A DNA stretch of 64,000 nt from contig NW_003314353.1 in assembly GCF_000143415.4 (NCBI RefSeq), positions 658,371-722,370 on the forward strand, in the 5' to 3' direction. Position 1 is the stretch's first letter. Each line of letters starts with the position of its first letter. The position numbers and the translations under genes were made by a program. The DNA is from Selaginella moellendorffii. Its lineage: Eukaryota > Plantae > Lycopodiophyta. Shown one piece after another: positions 1 through 44,343 of the stretch. The notes beneath the pieces were generated by a model. It saw only the letters and a program-made list of their open reading frames with translations. It did no database searches and was not told the origin of the DNA.

Positions 1-240
1 CTGATGCCTTCTGATGTTCCTCCAGATCCTAGCTCGTCTAAGAGAGAACCTTGACTATCTTCTATCATTCCGAGAGGAGAGGATGATGTGAGGTCTATTA
101 TTGTTTATTTTAAATCCTTTAGGGCTCAATTATTTGGCTTTGTGCATTGATTGAGTCTTGTGAAGAATGGGACTTACAAATTCTCAATTGAGAGAGCAGC
201 CAAGAAACAAAGATGCCTTAAAAACTAAGATATACTAGAA
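1..240 (+). mobile_element. 3' internal end, polypurine tract and start of LTR of a gypsy-type retrotransposon remnant
   Basis: 1-95 aligns with the reverse complement of ~1729-1827. PPT-like GAGAGGAGAGGATGA is followed by TGTGAGG. Cut by the N gap. Confidence 0.55.
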
Positions 241-348
241 ATTCAGAANNNNNNNNNNNNNNNNNNNNNNNNNNNNNNNNNNNNNNNNNNNNNNNNNNNN
301 NNNNNNNNNNNNNNNNNNNNNNNNNNNNNNNNNNNNNNNNNNNNNNNN

Positions 349-665
349 TGCTCAACAAGAGAACTCATAAGTTTGTCACCTTCCAAGAGATAATGTTTAT
401 CACTCATGTTTTCCAACACAGGCTGATTGATATGGTTCATAGATACTTTGTCTAAATTACTGAAGTTTATATTTTGCCATGTTGTCCATAATGAAATGCT
501 TTTTGTGGAGAAGGTAAGCTTTCTAATCTCATGCATTTGGTTTAAAACTTGTGTTCTTCTTGGAAGGTTGCCAACACTTTTGAAAAGGAATTGTGTAGGA
601 TCTACTAGTAAGGTGGTTTTCATTCACTGTAGCTTCATTTGGAATTATATTTACCACTATGTGAT
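349..665 (+). pseudogene. Degenerate, intron-containing duplicate of the 3' (EF-hand) part of the LPEAT2 gene
   Basis: Colinear with the reverse complement of ~31525-31881 across exons and three introns (e.g. GTCACCTTCCAAGAG, AAGGTAAGCTTT, AGGAATTGTG). Donor GTAAG is mutated to ATAAT, and there are indels. Confidence 0.85.
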
Positions 666-1026
666 AAATATAATGAGGAACTAGATTTTTAGTGGCATTT
701 ATAAAATCATATTTTTTAACCTCAGAAGATGAGTAAATATTTCTTGGATTGGATGATAAATAAATTCTATAGCAAAAACATGGCAAATAAATACTTAGAA
801 CTGCCAGCTAAAGAAGTGAAAGATTATTAATCCTCTAAGAGACCTACAAGAATTTCTTTAGACAAATAAGGTACTTTGGAATTTCCAGCTCTACTATGAT
901 GCCATTTGTCAAATATAAATTTTTTTGGCTGTTATCTAGACATGATTAACAATTGTTACAGCTATCTCCAACTAGCATACTATACTTAAATAGGATTCAT
1001 GGCTTGAATTTTTTGAATGAAAAGAA

Positions 1027-1443
1027 ATGAATTATATATTGCTTCTTTTGTCAATTCTTTCTACTATAGTTTTTACACAAAGCTTAGAAGGTTTAAATGA
1101 TTCATATTGTAAAGAGTTTGATTGGGAAAAACTTATGTTATGCATTTTGAATGAAATGATAGGTATTTATGGAGACAAAGTAAATATATTTATGTATAAA
1201 GAATCAAATAAGTTCAAAAGCTATCAAAATCCAGATCCAATATTTGATAATAGAGAATTTCATATTGATCTAGCAGATGGGTCTCGTGAAACTTATATGA
1301 TTATAATTTTTACTGGCCAAGCATTTTATATAGCTGATAATTGGTATGGATGGAATAATTGGTCATTTACAGGTTGTTTTCACCATCTTAAAGATTCAGA
1401 TAGTGTAGAATTTTATGATTTTAAATCATTTTGCAATAGTTAA
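1027..1443 (+). CDS. Intronless small secreted protein (138 aa), YvgO-like / GWxNWxFxG family
   Basis: ATG to TAA open in very AT-rich DNA. N-terminal hydrophobic signal peptide (MNYILLLLSILSTIVFTQS), 4 Cys, and C-terminal TYMIIIF...GWNNWSFTGCF...DSVEF motif resembling Bacillus YvgO and fungal small secreted proteins (compared from memory). Confidence 0.65.
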   Translation: MNYILLLLSILSTIVFTQSLEGLNDSYCKEFDWEKLMLCILNEMIGIYGDKVNIFMYKESNKFKSYQNPDPIFDNREFHIDLADGSRETYMIIIFTGQAFYIADNWYGWNNWSFTGCFHHLKDSDSVEFYDFKSFCNS

Positions 1444-1541
1444 CATTAACACTAATTATTTTTACCTATTACTTAAGATAAATTTATCTCTAAAACTAAT
1501 TGATTACTAGTCATTGAGTTTATAAATTAAAAAATTAGATA

Positions 1542-2720
1542 TGTGAGAGCATGGAATATAGAAATAGAATACAGAATATATATATATTAATTAACCGAAA
1601 AACCTTAGCTTATATACAGGAGCAAGTGGTCTAAATTGAAACAAATTTGACAGCTATCAAAATCCCACTACACTAATTTAGTGTATGACTATTAATATTA
1701 GTATATAGCATCATAGCTATACACTTGGACCTCATATTATCCTCTCCTCTCAGAAGAATATAAGGCAGTCAAGGTTCTCTAATTGATGGGCCGGGATCTG
1801 GAGGAATATCAGGAGAAGGCACCAGTGGATCTATAGGTGGTATTAATTGTTTTTTATTCCTTTGTACAAAGCATTTCAACTATTACATATACACAATTTC
1901 TAGAGGATTAACCTGTTGCCAAAATTTATAAACTTTTAGCCCAACTTGTTACAACATCTGATATGGTCCTTTCCATTGAGTAAGGAGCCCCTTAGACAAA
2001 CCATGTACAGTAGGATTGGGGAAAAAGATTAACACCAAGTCGTCTACTTTATACTCTACAAATGGACAATGATGAGAGTTGTAGTGCTGTTGTTATCCCA
2101 CTTGTAAGCAACCTAAGTGTTCAGTAGACTCTGCTCAGACAAGTGGAAGAATGCTTGTTAAATACTGATCCCAAAATGTAGTAATGGTAGCTTGTGGCAA
2201 TCACTAAAGTAAACTTTAATTCTAAAACGAACAGCATCGCTAAGAATTTATACAAACTAAATGATGTACGAAAAGTAATCTTGGGAATATCCTCCTTAGC
2301 CATCAGCACTTGCTAGTACCTAGAAGCAAGATTTAACTTGGTGAACTAACGATTCTTCCCCAGACAATCCAGGAGATCAGTAGTATGAGGAAGAAGGTAC
2401 ACATCTAGGATAGTCACTTTACTTAATGAATGATAGTTGATGCATCAATGAATACTCCCATCAGACTTCGTCACAAGATAAGGTTTATATGCCCAAATAC
2501 TCCAAGACTTTTAGACAACACCCTTTTCCAACATCTCTTTGACATTTGCATGTAAAATTTTGATCTTCTTTGGTGATGGACGACAAGCAAGAACTTTGAT
2601 TGGACAAGCATCCCCAGTTGAAATAAGATAACATGTTGCAATATTAGCCTTAGATAACAGGTCAAATTCGAAGAGATCATCATACTCCTTCATAAGCTAG
2701 TCAACTTCTGCAACATAAAG
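1542..2720 (-). mobile_element. Deleted Ty3/gypsy remnant: 3' LTR (~1542-1738), PPT, integrase C-terminus and RT fragments
   Basis: Minus-strand peptides ISTGDACPIK...VKEMLEKGVV and EDIPKITFRTSFSLYKF match the gypsy RT N-terminus. PPT GAGAGGAGAGGATAA precedes the LTR, which ends CTCTCACA. Many stops. Confidence 0.75.
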
Positions 2721-3148
2721 ACCATCAAAGGGATCTGAAAAGGTAATAAAGGAACAAAACAGAAACATAGGAGGAAGTAATAACAAGACAAAAGTGATGG
2801 AAACAGAGGTAGAAGTAGAAGTATGAGAGAAATAGAAATGAAAGGAATGGAAAAAATATAAAAAAATATGAGACAAAAGGGAGAAGCCTGAAAGTTACAT
2901 TTGGCATGATTGTGCACAACCTATCTATATTAAGGATGAGGTCAAAAACTTGACTTGGTACCACTTGTAACAACTAAAGCTCAAGCTCGAGATCGCCCAC
3001 ACACATAATTAAGTTTACCTTATCCCATACACATGTGTGTGTATGGCCATTACCATAAAGAATGAAAACTAGCTCTGCTACATGATGCAAATGTAAATGG
3101 CAACTTATGGCTATAAGTCAAGCAATATAAGATAAACTCAAGCATACT

Positions 3149-4485
3149 TGTTAAGGCATGACCATTTAAAGAGTGAGGGAATATTCTAATCCTTAGAATA
3201 TTCCCCATCTTACTTGTATAAAACCCACGCCCCACAAGGGCAAAGGGGGGGGGGGGGGGGGGGGGGGGCATTTGTGAAAAGCATTGGAGCATTTTTTGTT
3301 TGAAAGAGTGTTGGGGGAGGCACCCCTCCCCCCAATAAATGGTGAACTTGATGTGATTGCACATTACTTTCTATAGCATAATTTCTCTCTTTTTCTTTCA
3401 GTCGCAAAGTTTGAGGAGTGATTTCTTATTCATCTTGCATCAGTTTTACTTGATCTTAGGTGCGTTGGATAGGTCTTGAGCTTCTCTTTTTGGCATGGTA
3501 TGACACTCATCAAGCTATATAGTATTTGAGGAGATATAACGCTCGGTTTGGTGACATTTTGGGGTTTTCACTTTCTCGCCTAGATTCTCGACCCAATTTC
3601 TCAAAGAAATGCATTTGGATTTGTAGATTTGGCCTAGATCTATAAGATGTAGTGATTCTTGGCGATAGATTTGGGTGAATTCATGGCATGCAAAAGGATT
3701 TTCTTCTCCAGTTAAATAAGGGCATCTTTGTAGTAGGAATTTGTGCTTCTTTGGGCTTTGTTTTGGATGCCGTTTGTTTTTAGAAGTGCTCTTGGTCCTA
3801 GGCTTTCTGAGAATACCAATGGCACCTTGGTATCAATCTAGATTGGTGACATGTAGATGTTTTCCACAATATTGGTGTTTTGGGCTATTTTTTCTTGGAT
3901 TTCGCAGGATATTGAGGCATTTTCTTCACAAATTCTTGCAATAGAGGGTAGATGGGGCTGAGCTCTTTCTAATGAGCCTACTTACAGTCAAAATGGTGAA
4001 GGATCAAGACCAAGGTACTCATTTTTCTCTTTTGGGCTAAACTTTAGTGAGAGTTTCTTTGGAAAGAAGAAACCTTTAGGGAGTAGGAGTAGGAGTAGGA
4101 GGAGGTGTAGGGGTAGGAATTGGCATAGAAGTTGGCACTAAAGTAGGCATAAGAGTAGAAGTGAGAGTAGAGAGGTTATTGGTTATTGGTTACTAGTTAT
4201 TGTTTGTTTCTCTTTGTCACGGGCATTTTAGGCAACTTTGAGCAACTTGTGGAACCTTTAGAGAGTAGGAGTAGGAGTAGGAGGAGGTGTAGGGGTAGGA
4301 CCATTTATTTCGGCCAAGAGTTCTTCTTTTTGTGCTTTAGAGACCTTTATAGCCTTATTGCTTCTGTCAATCTAGTTGCCTTGACTAGGAATTTGCAGTA
4401 TTTAAGGTATTTGATGCCGTGTACAGACTAGGCATGTGGCAAATTGGTGCCCTTTTACCATATTTCAAGGTCCTAAGGTCTGTTA
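3149..4485 (+). mobile_element. Truncated copy (5' LTR 3149-3337, tRNA-Trp PBS 3340-3358, leader) of the LTR family at 6423-11573
   Basis: LTR begins TGTTAAGG and matches the reverse complement of 6423-6608 and 11403-11573. PBS TGGTGAACTTGATGTGATT resembles tRNA-Trp PBS TGGTGAACCCGACGTGATT. Leader is colinear with the reverse complement of ~10190-11400. Confidence 0.85.
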
Positions 4486-6422
4486 GTGCTACTGCAATGG
4501 AAAGTCTAAACACAGAGATGCTTCTGGAAAACGACGAGTCGTGCAAGTAGTGGAGGGTCCTTATGCAAATAACTTAGTGACCCTTTTATTCTTCTTTCGG
4601 AATATCATTAATAGGGTTTATTTGGCACTAGTTCATCCAATCTTTACTTTCCAAGCTTATTTGATAACAAAAGGTTTTCTATTATTCTCCCCATGTTGAT
4701 TGATACGGAGAAAAGTGAGCGGGGCAAATATAGTGACAAATGTGTAGTGAATTTAGGAATGAGCAGAGGATATGCACAATAACATATCCCATAGTATATA
4801 TATAGGAGTATATTCTAGGGTTTGTCATAGTTGAAACATAATGAAGTGAGAGCACTTGGAGAGAGTGCACATTTTGGTACACTAGACAGGGTATAGATGT
4901 CTTCTAAACATGCTTGACTTATAGATCTAGGGAGAATAGAGAGAAGATGAAGATTTCTCTCTTTTCTTTTGCTATGAAGATTTTTTGTTTCTTGACCATG
5001 TCCTTCTTAGAGCTATGCTGCCGCGGTGGGAGAGGAATTAGAAAGTGATTTTACTTTCCTTCTCTTCCTTGGGTCTAGGGCTTTCTTGGGAGTCTAAGCA
5101 CACTCAAATTGAAGTAAGGAGTGGGGAGATTTGGTCATTTTTTTGTGTTGCAACTTCTTGCTCAACACCACTAAATTTGGGAGTCTAGATCTCAAGATTT
5201 GTTCAACCTTTTTGAATTCCATAAAGTGGATTTGGAGTGGCATTTTCTAAGCTTTCCTAGGATGGGTTTCTTGCTGGAATTAGAGATCATTTCAGCCACC
5301 AAATAATCAAGTTTCTAAAGGTGATATTTTAAGGTTCTTGCCTCATCTAAACTCTAGCTCTTCTCCACGGTTTTGGATTTTGGATCCAAGTCTTCCACTA
5401 GCTTAGGGTACTAGAGCATGGTCTATGGTTTCATATGAGGAGTTTTATCATATCCTTGATTGCTCACATTGTAGATCTTGTCAACCGGTTATTCATCACC
5501 TGGATCTTTTACCACTTGATGATCCAGGTCCAATGCATGTGATTCTTGAGGAGTTAGGATAAGATCAAATGCAGCAAATGCCTCCCCATCCTGCTATAGC
5601 AATTGACCTATATAGTATCACGATATTGCTAAAGTTCCAAAGAGATGGTCGAGAAGATGCCTGAGTCTATATTAACTAGACAAAGAGACCTCCTCACCAA
5701 CCAAACTACCACCAACAAAATCAATAATATGATCCACCACCCAGAAAATACTTTATCTCATTGAAGTTAATCTCAATTGAGTTATCTTGAAGAATAGTAC
5801 ACACTGCACTACAAATCCTAATACTCAAGAAAACAACCTTTAAGGCAAATTCCCAAGTCAAGAAAACTCAACACCCATCAACACACCAACCAACATCAAG
5901 AAGCAACAAGATTGACTAGGAATCAAACTTGAATAACTCCAATTGATTCATCAACAAATCAATCTTGAAGAAGACTCAGCACTTTGACAAGAAGGAACTT
6001 GACTCACATTAATACTCAACCTTAAAGAGCCAACTGAAAAAATCAACTTAGGAACTGAAGATAAACCAAAGAAATTCTACATTGTTAATGACTTCAAGAT
6101 AAAAACAATGAATCTTCTTAATAGGTATAAAGATTTTTTATTTGGTTATATACAGATTTGCGAGGAATTGAGATCTACATACACCAAATTGACAAAATAC
6201 ACCAAGAAAGCAAGTAGACTATCAAATGAACCCTAATATGCAAGCAAAAGTTAAAGAAGAACTTGATAAGCATAAGAATGTTGGATTCATCTACCCAATT
6301 CAAAACTTAGAATGGCTATCACCACTTGTTATTGTCCCCAAGAAAAGTGGCAAACTTAGAGTTTTCGTCAACTACAAAAAACTTAACAATACAACCCAAA
6401 AAGATACCTTCCCAATTCCATT

Positions 6423-9400
6423 TGTTAGGGGAAGGAGGGGCACCTCCCCAACGCTCGCTCAAACACGAAAAATGCTTCAATGCTCTCCACAAATGCCCCC
6501 CGTTTGCTCTTGTGGGGCAAGGGTTTTATACAAGGAAGATGGGGAATATTCTAAGGACTAAAATATTCCCTCTCCCTCTCTCTCTCACTCAATGGCCACG
6601 CCCTAACATGCGACCACGGTTGATCATGTTGGCTCTAGACGTGAAAGAACCCTCCGAAGAGTGTAGAGTGTACCTTTGCTACTAATGCCAAGTGCTGGTA
6701 ACTGCGTGAAATAGTAGAAACTCTAGAAAACAAAGTGGAAAAGGAAAGAAAAGAGGTAGGTGCGAAGTTTGAAAACAAGGAAGAAAACTTGATGGGAAAC
6801 CTTGTAGTCACACTAGACCCTGAAGTGAAAAAAAAGTGCAAAAAAAGTGTGAAAAGAGGAGAAAAATATAAGAAAAAAAAGAAGAAAAGTGAGTACCTAA
6901 AGAACCTAACCCGTACCTGGATTTTGAGTATAATATGCAAATGCAGCCACTTGATGACTTCAAGTATGCTCCAAGGATTGGCCAAATTTGAGAAAGAAAG
7001 AGAGGTAGAAGAGGGGATGCATTGCCCAAAGTGGTAAGTGTGGAAATGATGAAAGATGAAGTGATATGGTGGAGCGCTAAAATGGTGGTGGCACTCTAAG
7101 AAGGTGGCCATCTCTGAAAGTGTCAGGCCAATGGTCTGATGTGTCGGACCGAAGAAGACAATAGCTGAAAAGGATGGCATAGTCACTAGGTTGCCGGTAA
7201 AGAGAGGTGGCATGTGTCCATTGAGTGCTAGATCAGAAAAAAGTGGCTTTGGCTTCTATGGCCTTGCCTAAAGATCCACCTAGGTGCCTTGAGTGAACAG
7301 GTTCACCCAGTTGGAAGAAAGTCGCTCCAGAAAAGCTAGTGCATCATCAACAAATGGTCGTAATGATATCTCAAAAACAGCGGGTCCAAATGAGGTGGTG
7401 TTTTTTTGCTCCTGGTGCATATATGAGTGTCCGTGGTATGGTGTAAATATGACCTCAAACGAAGATGGAAATGATGGTGAAAGAATGAAAGATGCAAGAT
7501 AGGCATCTAGAGGTAAGTGCAGGCAATGCTGCTGGAAGTGATTGGTGATAGAACTGTGAGTGTAAATGATATGGAATGGGTGTGGGGAATGTGTGGGGTG
7601 TATTAATGGTAAGGGAGGGCCAAAGAACTTGGAACAGAGACCGAGCCAAGTGAAGAACCTCTATACAAATGGCAATGCAACTTGAGCACGAAATCCAAGG
7701 CATGAGCCATGGTCCAATGGAAAAACACCCTCTGAAAGTAAGAAAAGGAGCCATGAAAGTAAAATGAAAGAAAGGAAGAAAAAGAAAAAGAAGAGAAGAG
7801 GAACGCCTCACCGGATGAAGCGTTTGAGGTGAGAGTGGTTGTGAGCGTGTGGGAGCTCACGTCCATCAGCATTGACTAGCACATATGCTCCACCTCCGAT
7901 GTGTCGCTGGACAAAGTAGGGCTGGTCTAGCGAGGGGAGAACTTTGAAGGTGGTGTAAACTCTTTGAGTAGAACAAGATTGCCATCTTCGAATGGTTCGG
8001 CAGACCGCTGGTGATCAATGACTAACTTGATCTTCTACTTGCCTCGAAGGAGATGTTCAATCGTGGATCATCGCTGTTCTTCTAAGGTAAGAACCTCCAA
8101 GTCACGTGCATGAAGCTTATCCTCATCACTAAGCTGCATTGCTGTTGCATATCAAAGTGAAAGTGAGAGTGAGTGCTAGATCTCCACTAGAAGCATGGCC
8201 TCTGTCCCATAGACAAGGGAGAATGGGGTTGCGGAGATGGATGTCTTGAAGGACGTCTAAAAGGCCCACAACGCCGTAACCAAGTGCTTGTGCCAATGCC
8301 TTGGGTCATCCTCCACAAACTTTGAGATGATTGTCTTTAGTATCTTGTTGTTGGACTTGGCCTAGCCATTGCACTTAAGATAATAATTGTTGCTCTTCAC
8401 GTGCTTGACCTGCAGCCATTGGAGAAGATGCTGCATCACCTCTCCAAGGAAGCTGCTGCCACGATCGGAAATCAAAATGGCAGGAACTCTGAATCAGCAA
8501 ATAATGTACTCGTAGACAAACTTTGCTATAGACTATTGATCTTCTTGTCATAGAGGGGTGGCCTCAACCCATTTTGTGAAATAGTCCATTGCCACAATGA
8601 CGTATCACTGTCCTTTTGAGCTCGGTGGGTTGATTGGGCCAATGAAGTTAAGTCCTCACTAGAAAAAGGGACCCGAAGAAGTGATGAGATGGAAAGGAAG
8701 ACGTGGAACATGGCTCCAGGGGTTGAACCATTGGCACTGCTCACATGCCTTTGCATAGACCAAGCTGTCCTAGTGAATCTGAGGCCAAAAGTAGCCATGG
8801 TGCAAGAGGAGCTGTGTTGTGACCTGTCCCGAGAAATGCCCCGCACAAGAGTGGAAAGCACGAAGGAGCTCAGGGACCTCATGTTCACCCACACACCGCA
8901 ACAAAACTTCCTGCAAGGTCCTTCTGTAAAGGTGTTTGTTGAGAAGGGAAAACCCTTGTGCTCGAATCTCCAATGCCTTTTGTTGCGCTGGTGAGGAATC
9001 TACTGGGAACTGACTAGAATCTAGGTACACTGCAATGTCCTATAATGCTACTGGGACTACAAAGGAAGTAGCTTCAACAACCAGAAACCTGCTCGGATCC
9101 ATCACACGCTTCTGACGCATGTGAAAATTTGGCTGGAACTCTTGGATAGTCACAATCCAAGATAAAGTACAAGGACTATGAACCAGTTGCTGTCAAAGAA
9201 AGGTCAACACATTAAAATAGATATGGAAATGGATACAAGCTCTAGCGAGAAAGTAACAAAATTGCTCTAAGGTGTAAATAACAACCACTACTTCTTTTTC
9301 CACATCCACGTACTTCTTCTTAGTCTCCTTGAATGAAATGTATAGCCAGAGGTGTATGCCCAATAGCAACGGGCTTTGGTGTGGATGGGCGAATAGTTGC

Positions 9401-26130: not shown

Positions 26131-26899
26131 TCACTTAAGCTGTCTGGAGCTCAAGCAAGCGTCCAGCACTCCGGAGTAAGCATACATGTTTGGTTTGGTT
26201 TCCATCTTTCGAAACATTTCCAGGGTGGTCTTTCCATCTCCGTGCTCCGAATAGGCCGTGATGATAGCTCCCCAGGCAACGATATCTTTGCGCACCATCA
26301 CGTCGAAGGCTTTGCGCACCATCCTCAACGCTGCCACACTTGGCATACATGTCCACCAAGCCAGTCGTGACGATGCTGCTGTTGCCGAAAGATGGTGCCT
26401 TTGCTCCGGTGGAAGATGCAACGATTAAGTGCGAGTGAATCGCCCGTCCCTCCTCGAGCGCGTCAGTTCCGAGCGCTCCACAGGCACCCAGAGCGATTGA
26501 GAAGATGAAGTCGTCCGGCTCCATTCTATCGTCCTTCATCTCCTGATAGGCATCGAGAGCGTCCCGGAAGAGCCCGTTCTGGAAGTAGGCGATGAGAATT
26601 GTCCAAGAGAAGACGTTCGTGGTGACTATCCGGTCGAAGGCACTTCGGGCTCGATCGAGCTCGCCGCATTTGCCATACATCTGGACGAGCAAATTCCCGA
26701 GAAACGTATCGCCATCGTAGCCGCGGGACTTGAGGAGGAAGTGGAGCCTCTTGCCTTCCCAGAGGTTCTGGCTGCTCCCGCATCTTCGCAAGGCCTCGGC
26801 GTAGCATTTGGTGGTGTCGCTGCTGCAGCGCAAACTTGGACTAGAACCCACTACAGCAACATCGCTGGCGAGGGAGCTGGAGCTCCAGACAGCGTCCAT
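26131..26899 (-). pseudogene. Truncated, frameshifted PLS-class PPR gene
   Basis: PLS motifs (GNLLVQMYGKCGELDRARSAFD, NVFSWTILI, GLVDMYAKCGSVED). After a +1 frameshift at ~26320 it continues as RKAFDVMVRKDIVAWGAIITAYSEHG, then stops. No E/DYW domain. Confidence 0.8.
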
Positions 26900-31399: not shown

Positions 31400-33682
31400 T
31401 TATTCCTCATTCAAAGAAAGAATTACCAGAGACAAGGGAAATATTAGCTCTGGATTTCTTTTAAGATATAAGCAAAACGTTGCATGGTCCATCCGGTCGG
31501 TTTGTTTACAAAATTGATCCACAAGCACCTGCAGTGTTAAAATGAATCTAAATGATGCTGCAGTGTATGAAAGCCACCTTGCTTGTAGATCCAGCACAAT
31601 TCCTCTCCAAAAGTGTGGCAACCTTTCAAGAAAGAACACAAGATTTAAAGCAAAAGTGTGAGACAAAAAAGCTTACCTTGTCCATGAGAAGCATTTCGTC
31701 GCTGTTCTTGTGGACCGCATGGCAAAACGTCAAATCCAGCAGCTTCAAAAAGCTTGCATTTCTGGACAAAGATACTGATGCGGCCACAAACTGCATCAAT
31801 CAGCCAGTGTTGGGAGCAAACCAGTAGTGACAATGCTTACCTCTTGGAAGGTGACGAATTCATGCTTTTTCCTGTCAAACATCGCAAAAGCCTGTGAATT
31901 TCTGATGTGAGTAGCCAGTTTTCTTAAGACATATCGATCTTCGCTTCTTACCTGCTCTCCGAATGGAGAATGTGTAAGTCCCAGGCTTTGCAAGAACTCA
32001 AACCTCGTCAGTTGCCCACTACATGAGTAGAAGAGGATTATGTGAACAGGAAAAGAGCAGGTTGATAGATTTACCTGCGAGATGAATTCATGATTGAGAA
32101 TTTCTCCAAATAGTAGAGTGCGTCGGCGTCTGTAAGCTGGAGTTGCTACGAGAAAACTTGGGAGGTCAGGCCTGAGATCTCTGAGAACAACTCTGTAAGA
32201 AAGGACTCGATGCCGATAACTTACCGTGTCCATTTTTCTCATTTCAAGTGTGAACGAGGTTGAAAAAGGCTAAAGAAAGAGCAAACTAAATAAACTCACA
32301 AGATTCAAGGACGTACCATTTTCAGCGACAACGATCTTGCAGAAAGGAGTAAATCACCATAACTGTGTTCCGTTTCCGGAACGTTGAGGCTCCTTGCCAT
32401 TGCATATCTCACCTGAAAATCAAAAGAATGATAAGTATGAGTATTAGTTTCAAGCACGTTTACCCTTTGTGCATAATCCGCTGGATGGGACTTTTCATGC
32501 GACGAGGGATATATAACAGGAAGATAATGAACCTGCTTGCCCACAAAATGGTTTTTTAAGCTTAGACAAAAATTCGTCTGACCTGCATAAAATTGTGAAA
32601 TTGAAGCAGCATCCGAGGGATCAAGCTTTTCAGAGAGATGTTGCCCCTGTGAAGCAAATGGATGAGAGGCTATCAAGTTGGTGTTTCAAGCACATACCAG
32701 GATAGATCAAAATGAACGTGCGGGTACTTAACCACAACAGGTTGTATTGGAAATCCAGGAACGAAGGCACCGGGCTTAAACGATATCAGAGCCTTTCCAT
32801 TTGTTGTAGTAGCCTCGGGAAATAAAAGAAGACGAGGAAAATCGCTACACATCGCTCTTCTCTGCATGAGCATCCATAAAATGTAGTGTTACATCCAGCC
32901 AAAGAGAAAATACTTTACCTTGATTTCCGCGATGGCGCTTTTCCTTGAAGCTGGAGATAACCTATCCACGGGAATCACCTGAACACACCAAACTGTGATT
33001 TCATTTATCAGATCGAAAGTGGCACCTAATACCTGCATTGATCTTATTATGGTGCCGACGAAAAGACGATCATTGTGTGAACTCGAGCTCACGATGGTCG
33101 GGAAGAGTTCGAAGAAGTAGAACATAGGATCGATGAACGATACATGGTTTGACACCAGGATGGGAGCGACTTCTCTGGGAGCAGGCCTTCCAATGCGCTG
33201 AATCCAATGGAACCTGGATAAACCAGAACAAAAGTGTGAGAACAAGAAGATCGACAGAAGAACTAGAAGAAGAAAGGAAAGACAGGCAAAGAAATAGTAG
33301 AAGAAAAGCTTACGCACCCAAAGCAGAAGAGTATACCTCGAGCGCAAACTCGAGTGCCCCACATTATATCTCGTCTCCATCGCGGCATGGCCTTGTGGTC
33401 ACTCTCCCAGCGCCATAGCGCCAGCTTCGTGCACAGGAATCCCAGGAACAAGAAAACTCCAATGAGAATGACTCTCACCACCAGCAGCGGCGAGCACAGC
33501 ACCGCCTTGAAGACCTCCCAGGCTCCACCAAACTTGTAGCTACTGTTCCGGAAAGGATCCACGGGCGAGCTGGCCGGCAGTGGAGGCAAGTCCTTGAATT
33601 CCCAGGCGCTCCACCACTTTACCTTGGAATTGGGCGAAGAGATAGCGCTCCTCCCAGAGTCTTGGACGTCGACCACACACAT
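31400..33682 (-). CDS. LPEAT2: Lysophospholipid acyltransferase LPEAT2 (PlsC domain + EF-hands), multi-exon
   Basis: Acyltransferase motifs VSNHVSFID and LLFPEATTTNG, PIQPVVVKYPHVHFDLSW, GNISLKSLIPRM, EF-hand AFAMFDRKKHEFVTFQE. Many short GT-AG introns. Confidence 0.92.
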
Positions 33683-34171: not shown

Positions 34172-35833
34172 TTACCATCGTAGAGCTTTCTTCTTTGGCG
34201 AGGATCTCTTTGGCCCTGGCGTGGCCTTTCCGCCCCTCCTTTGCTTTGGCGATGGCGATGGAGTGTTCTTCCTCTTTGGCGAGAACTTCCTTGGCGAGAA
34301 CATCCTTGGCGAGACGTGAGAGATCGGCCCTGGCAAGAGCCCCTGCTTCAGAGCGCTGGCCTTTGGAGTGGAATCCAAGGCCAGAGGAGTCATCCTGAAA
34401 GGCTTGCCAAACTTCCACGTAGTGTTGCTCTTGAGCGAGAACCTCACTTTCTTCGCCTTCTTGCCGGTGCTCGTCTCGCCCGCGTCGGTGTTGCTCTCGG
34501 CCACCGCTGGAGAATCGTCGTCCTTGGAGCTCTTTCTCTTCTTGCTGGCGGTGTGGAGCGGAGAAACTGGCGCTTTCCTGTTTATCTTCTTGGAGCCTGC
34601 TGGAGATCCGAGCTCCTCCGGAGCAGCAGCAGATGAGACCATCGGGGTCTCGTCCGGAAGAACAATCGCCTTAGTCTCCGCGTTCTTCTTCTTCTTCTTC
34701 GGTTTTTCCCCGATGAGAGGAGAGAGAACCATCTCCAGAGGAGGGACTGAAGCACCACCATCGCCATTTTCCTCCACAGCAACCTCGAACTTCTTCTCCA
34801 AGTTGGAGACCACCGGGTCATCCTGTTTCACGGTAGCCTCTGGACTTTTCACCTCGGCACTAGCTGGTGCCGCACTGCTGGCTGATTTTTCCATCTTGGA
34901 GATCTTGGCACTAGTTGGTGCCGCAATGCTGGCTGGTTTTTCCATCTTGGACGTAGCAGCAGCTGCAGTCGCCAGAGCTTTCAGGTCCAAACTCCTTTTG
35001 ATCTTCTTAAAGTCCTCGGAGAGAGCGTACAGCACCTTGCGATTTCCCTGTAGAGTGTCCGCTGAAGCTGCGAGCTCGAAAAGCCTCTTTTCCATTGGCA
35101 GACTGGTCACGAACTCGGCCAACTTGTTCTCGGACTTGACACTCTCCCTCGCAGCCTCCAAAAGACGATCAAAAACTCCTTCTTTGACGCGCTTCAGCAC
35201 ATTCTTGTCCGGACCAAGCGCAAGAGTTGCATAGAAAGGCTCCAGAAGAATGCCGAGAACTTCTTTCTCCTCCGGAAGAACACCATCAAGTTGCTCCAAG
35301 AAAATGTCCGCCAGATGCATACTACACCCCTGGGCCGGGAAGAGATCGTTGGAGAGAAAAGCCCGATTTTTCAAAGCGTCCATGTAGCGCTGGACAATCT
35401 CCTTGTCCCATCTCTGCTGCCTGAGTGCCATGAACATAGAACTCACGAACTTCCGCTGGAGAAGATAGAACTTGTCCATCCTCAAATGGTCTATCCCGCC
35501 CCATTCTCTCCGCATTGTGCCCAAATACCCCTCAAAGAACTGGAGTGCTAATTCGCTCGGAAGGCGCTGTATAAGCGATGCGAGGCGCTCCGCAAGATCT
35601 GCCTGGACAATCGCCTTGTCTGCGTGCCAGTAGCAGTAGAAAAGCCCCTTCCAGATCTTCCTCAGGTCGGCTTCGTCCACGGAAGTCCGGCATTCTAACC
35701 AGCTCGCCAGGAGCTCCACTGCGCGATCGCGTACCTTCTTGTCGACCGATGCCAGGCGCCGTGGAAGGCCGCCCGATTGGATTTCCAGCTCGCCGCCTGC
35801 CGCCAAGGGCTTGCTCTTGTTCTTCGCGACCAT
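34172..35833 (-). CDS. RRP1: Ribosomal RNA processing protein RRP1/Nop52 homolog, intronless
   Basis: Nop52 motifs LRKIWKGLFYCYWHADKAIVQ and MRREWGGIDHLRMDKFYLL. Basic low-complexity tail with KKVRFSLKSN. Confidence 0.93.
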   Translation of the reverse strand: MVAKNKSKPLAAGGELEIQSGGLPRRLASVDKKVRDRAVELLASWLECRTSVDEADLRKIWKGLFYCYWHADKAIVQADLAERLASLIQRLPSELALQFFEGYLGTMRREWGGIDHLRMDKFYLLQRKFVSSMFMALRQQRWDKEIVQRYMDALKNRAFLSNDLFPAQGCSMHLADIFLEQLDGVLPEEKEVLGILLEPFYATLALGPDKNVLKRVKEGVFDRLLEAARESVKSENKLAEFVTSLPMEKRLFELAASADTLQGNRKVLYALSEDFKKIKRSLDLKALATAAAATSKMEKPASIAAPTSAKISKMEKSASSAAPASAEVKSPEATVKQDDPVVSNLEKKFEVAVEENGDGGASVPPLEMVLSPLIGEKPKKKKKNAETKAIVLPDETPMVSSAAAPEELGSPAGSKKINRKAPVSPLHTASKKRKSSKDDDSPAVAESNTDAGETSTGKKAKKVRFSLKSNTTWKFGKPFRMTPLALDSTPKASALKQGLLPGPISHVSPRMFSPRKFSPKRKNTPSPSPKQRRGGKATPGPKRSSPKKKALRW

Positions 35834-36121: not shown

Positions 36122-38020
36122 ATGAACAGGGCATTGGGGATGGAAACGCTAGCTCCGGGCGCTCGATTGACGCACTGGCGGAACTCCGCAGTTTCTCCAG
36201 TCACAAATGCAACATTTCCATCCCGGAAAGCCGCATTTGGCATCGGATTGCGCGCTGGATTGAGCTGCTCGCCGCCGCGCCAGGTCGGATTCATCTCGAG
36301 GGATTCCTCGTCCTCCAGGAAAATCTCGTGCTCGTCGGCTCCAGAGCCGTCGACGCCGGCAACAGTGATCGAGGCGGACGATCCGAAATCTCTGAAAAAG
36401 CCGCTGGAGGGTGCCAAGCCTTTGCCACTGGCGATCTCGGTCAGTGTGGGGCTGATTTTGAGATTCCTGGTTCCAAAGCCCGCGGCAGTGTCGGCTCAAG
36501 CCTGGCAGCTCCTATCGATCTTCTTATCGACGATCACGGGTCTCGTTCTCAGTCCACTGCCGGTTGGAGCTTGGGCCTTCATAGGATTGACAACAACAGT
36601 GCTCACACGGACACTATCTTTCGCGTCGGCTTTCAGCGCCTTCACAAACGATGTCATCTGGCTCATCGTCATCTCCTTTTTCTTCGCGAGAGGATTCGTG
36701 AAAACCGGCCTGGGTGATAGAATTGCCACGTACTTCGTGAAGTGGCTGGGGAAAAGCACACTGGGACTTTCTTATGGGCTTACTGTGAGCGAAGCGCTCA
36801 TAGCACCAGCGATGCCGAGCACGACCGCACGAGCGGGGGGAGTGTTCTTGCCGATCATCAACTCACTCTCTCTTTCGGCTGGGAGCCGTCCAAACGATAA
36901 ATCGTCGTCAAAGCTTGGAGCGTACCTCGTCCAGACTCAATTCCAGGTTTGGTTTCTAACTTTTACGTGATATGTTGGTTTTAAAAGTGTTGGTGGCGCG
37001 AAATGCAGGCTGCTGGAAACTCGAGCGCTCTCTTTTTGACTGCTGCGGCACAGAATCTATTGTGCCTGAAGCTGGCAGAGGAGCTGGGCGTTATCGTGGC
37101 GAATCCATGGGTGACATGGCTTAAAGTGGCGATCGTCCCGGCCGCTCTATCGCTACTCTCGACCCCGTTGCTCCTCTACAAGTTGTATCCTCCCGAGATC
37201 AAAGACACTCCTGAAGCTCCTGCAATGGCTGAAAAGAAGCTGCAGCAAATGGGGCCTGTGACTAAGAGCGAGTGGGTGATGGTTTCGACGATGCTCCTCG
37301 CTGTTACTCTGTGGGTTTTGGGGTAAGTTATGGTTTTATCCAGTAATTTGCGATGTCTCACTGGTGATTTTTTTTTTCGCAGAGATAAACTTGGAGTTCC
37401 AAGTGTTGTGGCAGCTATGCTCGGCTTGTCAATATTACTGGTTCTTGGCGTCCTCAATTGGGATGACTGCCTAAGCGAGAAATCAGCCTGGGATACTCTT
37501 GCGTGGTTTGCAGTACTTGTTGGTATGGCCAGCCAGCTTACCAGCTTGGGACTCGTAAAGTGGATGTCCGACTCCGTCGCTAAAGTCCTGGCCTCGTTTT
37601 CTCTCAGCTGGCCTGCTGCATTCGGCGTTCTCCAGGGTTCATACTTTTTGATTCACTACCTCTTTGCGAGCCAAACCGGTCACGTCGGTGCACTCTACTC
37701 GGCCTTCCTAGCCATGCACCTCGCAGCTGGTGTTCCTGGCGTGCTGTCAGCGCTGGCTTTGGCCTACAACACAAATCTCTTTGGTGCGCTCACGCACTAC
37801 AGCAGTGGTCAGGCAGCTGTTTATTACGGAGGTAACTTTGTCATTCCAAAACAAGTGTTTCGTTCTAAACTTAACTATTTCCTGTCTTCGTTCTTGACTT
37901 TCAGCTGGATACGTTGAATTGCGGGACATTTTTAAATACGGGGCCATTGTAGCCCTGTGGAACGGCATTGTTTGGACCGTAAGTGGAGCAATATGGTGGA
38001 AGATCTTGGGTCTCTACTGA
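36122..38020 (+). CDS. DiT2: Plastid dicarboxylate (glutamate/malate) translocator DiT2, 4 exons
   Basis: Transit peptide then GAKPLPLAISVSVGLILRF...LSPLPVGAWAFIGL...GLGDRIATYFVKWLGKSTLGL, THYSSGQAAVYYG, ends WWKILGLY*. These are DiT2-type rather than DiT1-type motifs. Confidence 0.93.
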
Positions 38021-41185: not shown

Positions 41186-44100
41186 TCAGCGAGCGTCCTC
41201 GGAAGTAAAAGTCTCGGCGAAGCCCGACGGCCGCGGCGGGAGGCTCGACTGCGTGTCGCTCCACACCGCCGCCGCTCCGCCGCCACCGCCGCCGCTGTCC
41301 AGCTCCTGCCACCGCTTCACCGCCTGGGGCAGCGGCACGTCCAGGTCGATCCCGCCGCTCTCGTCCTCGTAGTCCACCGGCTTCCAGTGCTCCACCAGCG
41401 GCGAGAGGACGTTCACGGCGTGGCCCATGTCCGGCCGCTGGTATGGCTCCCTCGCGGTGCAGTGGCCGGCGAGCTCCGCCACCACGCTGATGCTCGCGAA
41501 GTTGTCGTCGGACTCGATGGCCGGGTCGATGAGCTTACGGACTCCCTCTTTGTTGGCGGTGGATCGCCGGAACCACGTTACCAGATGCATGTTTTCTTCC
41601 GCCTGCGTCTCGTCCAGCGCCCGCCGCCCCGTTATCAGCTCCATGAGCACCACCCCGAAGCTAAAGACGTCGGCCTTGGTGGTCACGCGCCCGGTAACTG
41701 CGAGAGGACGTTAATAACGAACAAAACATGCAGCGTTTTCTCGCAAAATCCTCTGCCGGATCGAGCACGAAAACGAGAATTCCACACGCACGCAGTAGCA
41801 GCAGCAGCAGCCCAGGCAGGCAGGCACGGCAGCGAACAGACAGCATAAAAGTAAAGAAGCACACAGCCCAAGCAAGCAGGCGAAAACAGCTGGAAACAGA
41901 AGCATTAGACAAAACCGCACGACCAGCCAATGTGCCAAAAGTAAAGAAAGGAATGAAAAGAAGAGGAATACCAACCTGCATACTCGGGAGCCAAGTATCC
42001 AAACGTTCCGGCCAGCCGCGTCTCCACCGAGTACTTCCCCTCGGGTGCCAGCTTCACGAGGCCAAAATCCGAGACCTTAGCCCGGAGGTCGTCCCCGAGA
42101 AGGATGTTGGACGGCTTCAAGTCCCTGTGGATGAAGCTCCTGTGCGCCAGGCCATGGAGGTACTCCATGCCGCGAGCCACGTCCAGCGCCACGGACAGCC
42201 TTTGCTTCCAGTCCAGCGGCGGATAGCCGCACTTGGCAGCCTCGAACAGGTGCTGGCTCAGCGTCCCCTGCGGCATGAACTCGTACACCAGCATCTTCTC
42301 GTTGCCTTCGATGCAGTAGCCGAGCAGCGCCACCAAGTGGCGGTGGCGGACCTTGGTCAGAACCGCGATCTCGGCCTGGAACTCGCCCAGGCCTTTGTTG
42401 CTGACGACGCAGTTGGATTCCATCCGCTTCACCGCTATGGCCGTGCCGTCATCCAGGACTCCCTTGTACACGACTCCGAATCCCCCACGGCCTAGGATAG
42501 TCGCCTCGCTGAAGTTTTTGGTGGCCTCTCGCAGGACGTGGATGGAGATGACGAGATTCCCGGCCTCCACAACTTGAACGTGATCGCTGGGCCCGCTGTT
42601 GGCCCGGCTCTGGGTGTCGCTGTTGTCACTGGTGATCATGTTGTTGTTCACCACGATTTTTACCACCTCTGGATCGTCTGAGGAGTTGTCTGTCCGAGGA
42701 TGGACAACCACCGTGTTGGATCCCTGTAGCCTCAAGAACTTACGTCCCTTCTTCTTGTAAACCAGCAAGCAGATCCCAAACAAAACGAGCAGCAGTGCCA
42801 CTAGCCCGACCACAACTCCCACGATGGGACCTGCATTCACTCTTTTCGATCGAGTGGTAGCAGTAGCCTGTCCATCCGGCGTCGCAGCTGGTCCCCCAGA
42901 AGTCCCCCCCGGCGGAGAAGTCCCTGGAGACGCGGCGGGTGTGAGAGGATTGCCAGCGATGTTGAGCTTCACCGAGGACGGAAAAGCTGGCACTGGCGCC
43001 GAGAAGAGGTTGTTGCTCAAGTCCACGGACTGCAGCGAAGGTAGCTTCGCCAGGGACTCTGGAATGAGACCTTCCAGCTTGTTGTCGCTGAGCCTGAGAG
43101 TCGTGAGCGTCGTCAAGTTCCCGAGAGCAGCTGAGAGCGTGCCGTTGAGTTGGCTGCTTGCCAGATTGATAACCGTGACATTCGAAGTCGTCCCGGGGGT
43201 CGAGCCGCAGGAGATTCCCAGCCAAGCACTGCCGCTGCTGCCGTTGCTACCAGAAGTTCCACAAGGATCATTCCCGATCCACGACGATGTGAGCGAGTCG
43301 GGGTAGCCAACGCCAGCGAGAAAGTGCAAGAGCGCTGTCACGTCTCGTGCGCAAGCCTCTCCAGGACTGCTCTTGCAAAAGTTGTTCCGCGCGTACTCGA
43401 AGCCGACGGTGTCCTTGAAAACCGGAATCTCCCCCACGAGCAAGTTGTTCTTGACCGTGAAGTTCTTGAGCGCCGGGAGATTCGCGAGCGAGGGAGGAAT
43501 GGTTCCCGTCAGCTGGTTGTCGTTGAGCTTGAGCTCTTGGAGTGACAGCGCCTCCCCGAGACCCTCCGGAATGGAACCGCTGAATCGGTTCACGTGAAGC
43601 CACAGAACTCGCAGAGATTGCATCGTTCCCACGACCGTGATCGGCCCACTGAGCACCGGATTCTGCTGGTTGTTTGCCCGAAACTCCGCCAAATTCGAGG
43701 ACCCAAAGCTCGAAGGAATGCCCCCAGAGATCCTGTTGTAGGCGACGTTGAGCACCTTCAAGCTCTCCATCTGTCCCAAAAAATCTGGAATGCTTCCTCC
43801 CAAGCTCGTGTTGGTGATCGAGAGCGTGGAGAGCAGCGAAGAGTTCTGGATCTCTGCCGGAAGCATCCATCCCCCGGATGACTTGTTGAGAGGATTGTCG
43901 TCGAGGTAGATCTCCGTGAGCGCGCTGAGCCCAGTGAAGAAATCGCCAGGGATGGTGTCGAAAGAGTTCCCGGAAAGGAGCGCCGTTTGGAGCTGCGAGA
44001 GCCCACTAAGCGATGGTAGCGATCCTGTGAACCCATTCCCCTGGAGCTGGAGGTTCTCGAGATTCTTGAGCTTGTTGAGGTCGGGTGCCACGGTTCCACC

Positions 44101-44343
44101 CAGCGCCAGCCCTGCTACCTGGAGCGCCGATATGCTCGAGCCCTGGCATTTGATGTGCTTCCAGTTGCTCCCACAGGGATCGCTCCCAGTCCACGAATCC
44201 AGTAGCGCCGGATTCTTGACGCCCTTGAGGAAGTTCTGGAGGACCTGGAGCTCTGCCGAATCGGTCTGCGCCAGCGCCATGGCGAGAATCGATGCCACCA
44301 GGAGTAGCAGCAATGCCGCTGGATGCTTCTTCTTGAGCTTCAT
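41186..44343 (-). CDS. TMK: TMK-family LRR receptor-like kinase (exons 44343-41976, 41697-41186)
   Basis: Signal peptide, LRRs interrupted by a non-LRR island ([12 protein letters not shown]...WIGNDPC), TM helix, [58 protein letters not shown]-terminal [12 protein letters not shown]. Confidence 0.96.

What the first reader, a model, noticed from the sequence alone, without database searches (positions are those of the whole stretch)
1027..1443. Candidate horizontally acquired YvgO-like secreted protein gene intact inside a decayed TE block
Seen: a 138-aa intronless ORF with signal peptide and 4 Cys stays open in very AT-rich DNA where neighbouring TE ORFs are full of stops. From memory of Bacillus subtilis YvgO (G.KYNVMVFNLS...DGITYGIWVF...GGWINWAFRGWF..DG..V.F), the ORF keeps the same ordered motifs: GDKVNIFMYKES, DG...TYMIIIF, GWNNWSFTGCF, DSVEF. 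I know this family from Gram-positive bacteria and fungal small secreted proteins, not as a standard land-plant family. Inference: a microbe-derived secreted family in an early vascular plant, possibly for defence or microbe interaction. The GDGG loop is altered (DNWYG), so this copy may be diverging or decaying.
Basis: partly seen in the sequence, partly recalled or inferred. Interest (0 to 1): 0.8.

Follow-up and report, generated by a model that had tools for sequence, protein, structure and literature searches.

The report
Divergent YvgO-like secreted gene in plant
An intact, unannotated 138-codon gene in a land-plant genome encodes a small secretion-type protein that is a very distant but statistically solid relative of the bacterial YvgO "stress/antifungal" family; whether it was acquired from microbes and whether it is expressed remain open.

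Summary

It is longer than chance. None of 2000 shuffles of its AT-rich block reached 138 codons.

Standard searches with the ORF alone found nothing: Pfam, NCBIfam, PDB, the word search and phmmer over 1.84 billion proteins.

I fetched real YvgO genes with a DNA pattern and built profiles. The ORF then scores 24.7 bits (E 1e-9 for one comparison). Its residues 34-131 align with positions 17-104 of the 105-position domain. The next best of 1203 six-frame pieces of the window scores 6.8 bits, and 20000 shuffles reach at most 15.2. So the YvgO likeness is real, though only 25-31% identical. The C-terminal GW.NW.F.G.F...V.F core is kept and the GDGG loop is lost.

The gene is resident plant DNA. 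It has single-copy read depth like its unique flanks, a bridging contig in a second sample, and contiguous sequence up to plant genes.

Horizontal transfer is not shown. The tree is unresolved, and the family also occurs in fungi and in Chlorella.

Expression is untested: two RNA runs gave no reads on the whole stretch.

The four differences from another sample are all amino-acid changing.

This scan has already noted YvgO-like ORFs on other DNA of this genome.

The parts
1027..1443 (+). Complete intronless coding sequence, 138 codons plus TAA stop
   Evidence: The frame opens at 1021.
1027..1083 (+). Predicted signal peptide, residues 1-19 (MNYILLLLSILSTIVFTQS), with cleavage inferred after TQS
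   Evidence: Hydrophobicity profile and the -3/-1 rule. This is an inference; no predictor was run.
1126..1419 (+). YvgO/DUF7888-like domain, residues 34-131: one helix followed by a beta sheet
   Evidence: hmmsearch: 24.7 bits for the whole sequence (24.3 for this domain), ORF 34-131 against profile positions 17-104 of 105. Controls. MAFFT alignment. AF2 model with the family alignment: pLDDT 76-91 over residues 30-135.
1333..1347 (+). Altered loop ADNWY, replacing the bacterial N.GDG of the nearly invariant GDGG loop, with a one-residue insertion
   Evidence: Alignments.
1348..1380 (+). Best conserved motif GWNNWSFTGCF (bacterial GWINWAFRGWF). G108, W109, N111, W112, F114, G116 and F118 are invariant across the alignment. 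An N-W-S glycosylation sequon lies here.
349..1482 (.). AT-rich block (24-34% GC) at single-copy depth that carries the gene
   Evidence: X1 contigs at depth 185-290, like the unique pieces at 3371-5999. GC profile.
1483..4700 (.). High-copy repeat DNA directly downstream of the gene
   Evidence: Summed contig depth of about 1e3-1e5, mostly above 1e4.
8..95 (.). Left arm of an inverted repeat that brackets the gene block. It is separated from the block by the assembly gap at 249-348.
   Evidence: the repeat finder pair I2, 88 nt, 81% complementary. Alignment.
1728..1815 (.). Right arm of the same inverted repeat. It lies inside the high-copy repeat.
249..348 (.). 100-N scaffold gap. The left linkage of the gene block rests on scaffolding only.

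Best explanation
The ORF is a genuine, highly diverged member of the YvgO/DUF7888 protein family, and it sits in the plant's own nuclear DNA as a single-copy, intron-free gene in an AT-rich, repeat-rich region.

Shown: the homology, the intact frame, the coding-type composition and the residence in the plant genome.

Inferred: the product enters the secretory pathway through a 19-residue signal peptide. The mature protein of about 119 residues has one helix packed on a beta sheet and up to two disulfides from four Cys. It would be released outside the cell, where it most likely acts like Bacillus YvgO, as an extracellular protein that inhibits fungi or other microbes. Because the GDGG loop is replaced, its target or activity may differ.

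It is probably one copy of a fast-evolving lineage-specific family. That rests on earlier notes of this scan, which I did not verify. I do not think it is a recent insertion of foreign DNA.
For: Homology. A profile of 60 bacterial YvgO domains scores the ORF at 18.5 bits, E 9e-8 for a single comparison, and 0 of 5000 shuffles reach that. A more diverse profile of 57 sequences raises this to 24.7 bits, E 1.3e-9, covering ORF 34-131 against 17-104 of 105 positions. The next best of 1203 six-frame segments of the window scores 6.8 bits, and 20000 shuffles reach at most 15.2. hhalign gives E 5.7e-5. MAFFT independently aligns the whole domain and leaves F95, G108, W109, N111, W112, F114, G116, F118, V127 and F129 invariant.

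Fold. With the family alignment, AF2 gives pTM 0.72 and pLDDT 76-91 over the domain. The nearest Atlas model is a DUF7888 cluster at TM 0.70.

Coding signature. The ORF is longer than any of 2000 shuffles. GC1 > GC2 > GC3 with p = 0.004. 5.9% of possible substitutions create a stop, so the frame would survive 0.1 neutral changes per site with probability of only about 0.09.

Residence. X1 contigs cover 349-1600 at depth 185-290, equal to unique flank pieces. A 663-nt contig from a second sample (X4) bridges 1178-1840, from the ORF into the flanking repeat. There is no gap between the ORF and plant genes, including a PPR gene at 26 kb. Positions 355-658 are a diverged copy of a sequence at 31.5 kb in the same window.

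Function lead. YvgO of Bacillus thuringiensis is described as a proteinaceous antifungal (PMC8703302).
Against: Standard searches with the ORF alone found nothing.

The nearly invariant bacterial GDGG loop and the NR..FVK helix motif are not kept.

No RNA read lay on the locus in two RNA-seq runs, but no read lay anywhere on the 5.6-kb stretch, so this is not a valid test.

All four differences from the X1 sample inside the ORF change the amino acid: K29Q, H79Y, D123N and S134L. Their density (about 1%) equals that of the non-coding flank, so there is no sign of present purifying selection. The sample is tiny: P = 0.43 under neutrality.

The X1 contig has two gap letters somewhere in 920-1600 that I could not place. 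The (AT)n run near 1580 is the likely site.

The AF2 model is driven by the family alignment. The single-sequence model had pLDDT 44.

No solved structure or mechanism exists for the family.
Confidence: 0.6

Rival explanations
1. Silent relic. The ORF descends from a real YvgO-like gene but is no longer used. It lies in methylated, repeat-rich, AT-decaying DNA, is not transcribed, and has simply not yet picked up a stop codon.
For: There were no RNA reads in two runs. Two earlier follow-ups on other copies in this genome also saw no expression. The polymorphism is 4 non-synonymous to 0 synonymous, at the same density as the flanks. The neighbourhood shows GC-to-AT decay: where the upstream repeat differs from its copy at 31.5 kb, the ORF-side copy is A/T 29 times and the other way 12 times, p = 0.01. 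The catalytic-looking GDGG loop is lost.
Against: The frame is intact although 5.9% of substitutions would create a stop, and the GC gradient across codon positions persists. The conserved hydrophobic and aromatic core is kept along the whole domain. The RNA result is not a valid negative.
Confidence: 0.3
2. Horizontal acquisition. An ancestor of this plant took the gene from a bacterium or fungus, and it then multiplied and diverged.
For: Nearly all sampled family members are bacterial (Bacillota, Actinomycetota, Cyanobacteriota), with some fungal ones. The gene has no intron. Its GC3 of 0.17 is far from host genes at 0.57-0.82. phmmer found no relative of the ORF, from seed plants or any other source, among 1.84 billion representatives.
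Against: The tree gives no supported sister group; the ORF branch is 9.5 changes per column. Identity to any sampled relative is at most 31%, so any transfer was ancient or came from an unsampled donor. A Chlorella vulgaris nuclear gene with introns belongs to the family and pairs with cyanobacterial members. That allows descent from the plastid ancestor followed by losses. The AT-richness matches the local flank and a local decay bias, so it need not reflect a donor. The absence searches are too insensitive at this divergence to count.
Confidence: 0.35
3. Chance ORF with a spurious motif resemblance.
For: The scan reads a whole genome, so rare long ORFs in AT-rich DNA will turn up. hhalign probability is only 66%.
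Against: 0 of 2000 shuffles reach the ORF length. 0 of 20000 shuffles reach the profile score. The ORF stands 18 bits above every other frame piece of the window. The score rose when the profile was made more diverse. The alignment is collinear over the whole domain.
Confidence: 0.04
4. Contaminant or misassembly. The AT-rich block would come from an associated microbe and was scaffolded into plant DNA.
For: A 100-N gap lies 680 bp upstream. The composition is unlike host genes.
Against: Read-contig depth equals that of unique plant flanks. A contig from a second sample joins the ORF to the flanking plant repeat. The sequence is uninterrupted from 349 to 33761, which includes a PPR gene. The upstream flank is a diverged copy of other DNA in the window.
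Confidence: 0.02

Closest known systems
Bacillus subtilis/thuringiensis stress response protein YvgO (Pfam PF25411, DUF7888)
   Same: Both are signal peptide plus a single domain of about 105 residues with one helix and a beta sheet. The alignment is collinear over the whole domain. The core GW.NW.F.G.F...V.F is shared, as are the TY.I..F strand and the G.K.N(V/I) strand.
   Different: Identity is only 25-31%. The GDGG loop is replaced by DNWYG with an insertion, and the NR.GFVK helix motif is lost. There are two further small insertions. The ORF has four Cys where the Bacillus, Streptomyces and most other bacterial members seen have none. The host is a plant, the gene is very AT-rich, and expression and activity are unknown.
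Fungal YvgO-like small proteins (P0190 on contigs with a Het-6_barrel gene; Basidiomycota Atlas clusters)
   Same: They are eukaryotic members of the same fold (TM 0.62 over 107 residues). They contain Cys. P0190 has Cys in SGCF at the same column as the ORF's C117 in TGCF.
   Different: Pairwise similarity is limited to the C-terminal motif (20.8 bits). P0190 keeps the DGG loop. No common ancestry closer than with the bacterial members could be shown.
Chlorella vulgaris hypothetical protein D9Q98_003194 (P0181)
   Same: It is a green-lineage nuclear member of the family with Cys residues.
   Different: It has introns and keeps GDGGYINWAF. It pairs with Calothrix-type cyanobacterial proteins (SH-aLRT 92). 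It is no closer to the ORF than the bacterial members are.
Other YvgO-like ORFs noted by this scan in the same genome (s1-374864, s1-421622 and 11 more notes)
   Same: They carry the same description: AT-rich, mostly intronless, unannotated, secretion-type, YvgO-like.
   Different: No copy is at least 90% identical in DNA to this one (single contig at single-copy depth). There is no second copy in this window.

Membership tests
YvgO / DUF7888 (PF25411) | Significant match to a family profile over most of the domain | tested here: met
   My own profiles give 18.5 and 24.7 bits, E 9e-8 and 1.3e-9 for one comparison, covering positions 17-104 of 105. Shuffle and six-frame controls are clean. hhalign gives E 5.7e-5 and 66% probability.
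YvgO / DUF7888 (PF25411) | Passes Pfam's curated threshold for PF25411 | tested here: inconclusive
   hmmscan reports no PF25411 hit for the ORF. The same local model (PF25411.1) gives true Bacillus and Streptomyces YvgO only 12-13 bits, below its cut-off of 27. A blank is therefore uninformative.
YvgO / DUF7888 (PF25411) | Invariant C-terminal motif GDGGWINWAF.G.F ... V.F | tested here: inconclusive
   G-W-.-N-W-.-F-.-G-.-F and V.F are kept. Only a minority of the 24 columns invariant in the bacterial alignment A1 are retained. The GDG of the loop, I141 and A144 are replaced.
YvgO / DUF7888 (PF25411) | Secreted: N-terminal signal peptide followed by a single small domain | tested here: met
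   A hydrophobic 19-residue N-terminus with a TQS cleavage motif is read from the sequence. The domain follows directly. No predictor was run and there is no experiment.
YvgO / DUF7888 (PF25411) | Shared fold | tested here: inconclusive
   The model built with the family alignment matches a DUF7888 Atlas cluster at TM 0.70, but that is partly by construction. The single-sequence model is poor. No solved structure of the family exists.
YvgO / DUF7888 (PF25411) | Antifungal or stress-related activity | not testable with these tools
   Activity is reported only for the Bacillus thuringiensis protein (PMC8703302).
Horizontally transferred gene in a plant | Physically integrated in host chromosomal DNA | tested here: met
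   Single-copy depth, a bridging contig in a second sample, and contiguity with plant genes.
Horizontally transferred gene in a plant | Nested with support inside a donor clade | tested here: inconclusive
   IQ-TREE quick tree of 58 rows and 105 columns. The ORF branch is 9.5, and no starred (at least 95% SH-aLRT) set smaller than half of the rows holds it.
Horizontally transferred gene in a plant | Absent from related plant lineages | not tested
No plant genome collection was searchable. The protein searches are too insensitive at this divergence. A Chlorella member exists.

The most novel reading that the evidence does not exclude
Lycophytes, and perhaps ferns, carry an overlooked, unannotated and fast-evolving family of secreted YvgO-like proteins. 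The family would have been acquired anciently from bacteria or fungi and now serve as apoplastic antifungal defence proteins, with this ORF as one active member.
Probability: 0.2. Interest if true: 0.6.

Novelty: new member of a known kind. Interest (0 to 1): 0.4.

Why it matters
The full-text search found no paper that names YvgO in a plant. The protein is absent from a collection of 15 billion predicted proteins, so gene annotation has missed it.

If the family is expressed, it would add a microbe-type secreted protein class to early vascular plant immunity. It would also offer a test case for how such genes persist in AT-rich, repeat-rich DNA.

If it is silent, it is an ordinary decaying lineage-specific gene.

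The practical lesson is that a profile built from a remembered family detected what exhaustive single-sequence searches could not.

Tried and rejected
Searches with the ORF alone:
- Pfam, NCBIfam, PDB sequences, the word-indexed protein search, phmmer over 1.84 billion representatives, and ESM-Atlas feature search (whole protein and residues 30-135) all came back blank.
- The single-sequence AF2 model was too poor to use (pLDDT 44).

Structure searches with the family-alignment model:
- Foldseek against PDB found nothing at E <= 0.001. VIA-align wide gave a best Z of 4.6. BFVD viral structures gave nothing. There is no solved or viral counterpart.

Attempts to find relatives elsewhere:
- A giant-virus or other viral source: two scans of viral contigs found no relative.
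- Metagenome scans with the family alignment and with the ORF's own GWNNWSFTGCF motif found no ORF-like relative.
- A third protein search, restricted by length to short proteins, listed 82 family members (all hits up to E 0.1 among proteins of roughly 46-145 residues).
- tblastn and the profile found no second copy in the window.
- The search of earlier findings by sequence was blank.

Context checks:
- Pfam scans of 14 neighbouring ORF pieces gave no transposon domain.
- Rfam found nothing on 1-8000.
- The tree gave no placement for the ORF.
- The species name, Selaginella moellendorffii, comes from earlier notes only. I could confirm only that the window is land-plant nuclear DNA: LRR receptor kinase, PPR-DYW and Nop52 genes.

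Full report
**Observation**

The window holds an ATG-to-TAA reading frame at 1027-1443 on the + strand. It encodes 138 residues.
- The frame opens only two codons upstream of the ATG, so the N-terminus is defined.
- Residues 1-18 are strongly hydrophobic and are followed by TQS|LEG. This fits a eukaryotic signal peptide. It is read from the sequence and was not tested with a predictor.
- The ORF has 26% GC and sits in a block of 24-34% GC.
- In 2000 shuffles of that block the longest ATG-ORF averaged 49 codons and never exceeded 125.
- GC falls from codon position 1 to position 3 (0.34, 0.28, 0.17; p = 0.004). That pattern is typical of coding sequence under AT mutation pressure.
- Host genes in the same window have GC3 of 0.57-0.82.

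**What standard searches say**

With the ORF alone, nothing was found.
- Pfam gave only a sub-threshold DUF2860 hit.
- NCBIfam, PDB sequences and the word-indexed search of 5.8 billion proteins gave nothing.
- An exhaustive phmmer run over 1.84 billion cluster representatives gave nothing.
- The ESM-Atlas feature search gave nothing.
- The exact protein is not in the 15-billion-protein collection, so the gene is unannotated.

**Testing the YvgO idea with real sequences**

I used the remembered motif only as bait. I searched bacterial and archaeal genomes for the degenerate DNA pattern of GGWINWAF.
- This returned 76 loci. Nearly all carry a small protein with the YvgO architecture, from Bacillus, Streptomyces, other actinomycetes, cyanobacteria and Paenibacillus.
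- A profile search confirmed that sources name these proteins 'stress response protein YvgO'. Their precomputed Pfam family is PF25411, DUF7888.

Results against the plant ORF:
- A profile of 60 non-identical bacterial domains scored it at 18.5 bits (E 9e-8 for one comparison). None of 5000 shuffles of the mature sequence exceeded 12.9 bits, and the reversed sequence scored -0.1.
- I added short and divergent members from a third protein search and thinned the set to 57 sequences below 75% identity. The score rose to 24.7 bits (E 1.3e-9). ORF residues 34-131 align with positions 17-104 of 105, so the N-terminal helix is included.
- Among all 1203 stop-to-stop pieces of the window, the next best score is 6.8 bits. 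20000 shuffles reached at most 15.2.
- hhalign gave E 5.7e-5 with 66% probability.
- MAFFT alone aligned the domain collinearly with three small insertions. F95, G108, W109, N111, W112, F114, G116, F118, V127 and F129 stayed invariant.

Pairwise identity is only 25-31% and about 15 phmmer bits. That explains the blank database searches.

The bacterial NR.GFVK helix motif is lost as well.

**Fold**

- Folded alone, the ORF gave a poor model (pLDDT 44).
- With the 63-sequence family alignment the model reached pTM 0.72 and pLDDT 76-91 over residues 30-135. It shows one long helix followed by an antiparallel sheet.
- This is not independent of the alignment.
- The nearest ESM-Atlas models are an actinomycete DUF7888 cluster (TM 0.70) and two Basidiomycota clusters (TM 0.62 over 107 residues).
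- Neither Foldseek nor VIA-align found a convincing solved structure (best Z 4.6). The family has no structural or mechanistic template.
- The only functional lead is the reported antifungal activity of Bacillus thuringiensis YvgO (PMC8703302) and the listing of yvgO among Bacillus subtilis SigB-regulon genes (PMC7824861).

**Is it plant DNA?**

The window is land-plant nuclear sequence. It carries an LRR receptor kinase, PPR and PPR-DYW genes, and Nop52.
- A 100-N gap lies at 249-348. From 349 the sequence is uninterrupted to 33761.
- Contigs of a DNA run (X1) cover 349-1600 at depth 185-290, the same as unique pieces further right.
- From about 1483 to 4700 the summed depth is mostly 1e4-1e5, which marks a high-copy repeat.
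- A 663-nt contig from a second sample (X4) bridges 1178-1840, from inside the ORF into that repeat.
- Positions 355-658 are a 70% copy of 31533-31875.
- An 88-nt inverted repeat (8-95 and 1728-1815, 81%) brackets the block. The block itself is single copy, so the gene is not cargo of a multi-copy element.

Contamination and misassembly are therefore very unlikely.

At sites where the two repeat copies differ, the ORF-side copy is A/T 29 times against 12 the other way (p = 0.01). The neighbourhood is decaying towards AT, so the AT-richness does not have to come from a donor.

**Constraint and expression**

- The X1 sample differs from the window at four ORF positions, and all four change the amino acid: K29Q, H79Y, D123N and S134L. 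X4 shares two of them.
- Their density of about 1% matches the upstream flank. Under neutrality four of four non-synonymous changes has P = 0.43, so this says little. It gives no sign of present purifying selection.
- 5.9% of possible substitutions would create a stop. The frame would survive 0.1 neutral changes per site with probability of only about 0.09. Selection must have acted until fairly recently.
- Two RNA-seq runs, each sampled at about 12%, laid no read on any part of the 5.6-kb stretch. The tool itself flags this as no test.
- The X1 contig has two gap letters somewhere in 920-1600. I could not place them; the (AT)n run near 1580 is the likely site.

**Origin**

- The tree of 58 domains puts the ORF on a branch of 9.5 changes per column with no supported neighbour.
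- The family is mainly bacterial, but it also occurs elsewhere.
  - It is found on fungal-type contigs next to a Het-6_barrel gene.
  - It is found in Basidiomycota by fold.
  - It is found in a marine metagenome protein, P0179, which is the best pairwise match at 29% over 106 alignment columns.
  - It is found as an intron-containing nuclear gene of Chlorella vulgaris that pairs with Calothrix-type cyanobacterial proteins.
- No viral relative was found.
- Earlier notes of this scan report 13 YvgO-like ORFs in this genome, which they name Selaginella moellendorffii, and one follow-up reports fern relatives. I could not fetch those sequences, and my searches found no fern protein. I treat this as an untested lead.

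Taken together, a recent transfer from any sampled lineage is excluded. Ancient transfer and old descent with losses both remain open.

**Verdict**

- The family assignment is supported as a very divergent member.
- The horizontal-transfer and defence readings are plausible but unproven.
- The thing itself is a new, unannotated member of a known family in an unusual host. This scan has already noted it on other DNA of the same genome.

Noticed in passing
L082:3001-3714 (Chlorella vulgaris SIDB01000004.1): A nuclear, intron-containing YvgO-like gene (P0181) in a green alga. In the quick tree it pairs with Calothrix-type cyanobacterial proteins P0182/P0187 (SH-aLRT 92). This hints at a cyanobacterial source for at least one green-lineage copy.
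   Followed up: partly
L077:2521-2820, L078:1601-1900, L079:2156-2455: Three Logan contigs carry a YvgO-like protein (P0190) about 660 bp from a gene with a Het-6_barrel domain, so they are probably ascomycete DNA. P0190 has Cys in SGCF at the same column as the plant ORF's TGCF.
   Followed up: partly
window 8-95 and 1728-1815: An 88-nt inverted repeat (81%) brackets the gene block. The right arm lies in DNA with read depth of 4e4-9e4. These are two inverted copies of a high-copy repeat, and homology probably runs past the left end of the window.
   Followed up: partly
window 355-658 and 31533-31875 (-): A 70% identical repeat pair. The copy next to the ORF is more AT-rich (34% against 43% GC). 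The substitution asymmetry is 29 to 12 towards A/T, which suggests local C-to-T decay.
   Followed up: yes
protein P0001 (301 aa, Logan/ENA): A natural fusion of two YvgO domains in tandem in one bacterial protein.
   Followed up: no
Pfam PF25411 (DUF7888), local copy version .1: The local model scores true Bacillus and Streptomyces YvgO proteins only 12-13 bits, below its 27-bit cut-off. The precomputed annotations (version .3) assign them to the family.
   Followed up: yes
window 34172-35833 (-), 36122-36970 (+), 41905-44343 (-), 47771-48859 (+), 26135-26899 (-): Ordinary GC-rich plant genes share the window: Nop52, a sodium:sulfate symporter fragment, an LRR receptor kinase, a PPR-DYW editing factor and a PPR protein. 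None of the exact translations I looked up is in the 15-billion-protein collection.
   Followed up: partly
window 1206-1245 and 1639-1678: A 40-nt direct repeat (73%, with a 14-nt exact core AGCTATCAAAATCC) links the ORF interior with the start of the high-copy repeat downstream. This is probably chance in AT-rich DNA.
   Followed up: no
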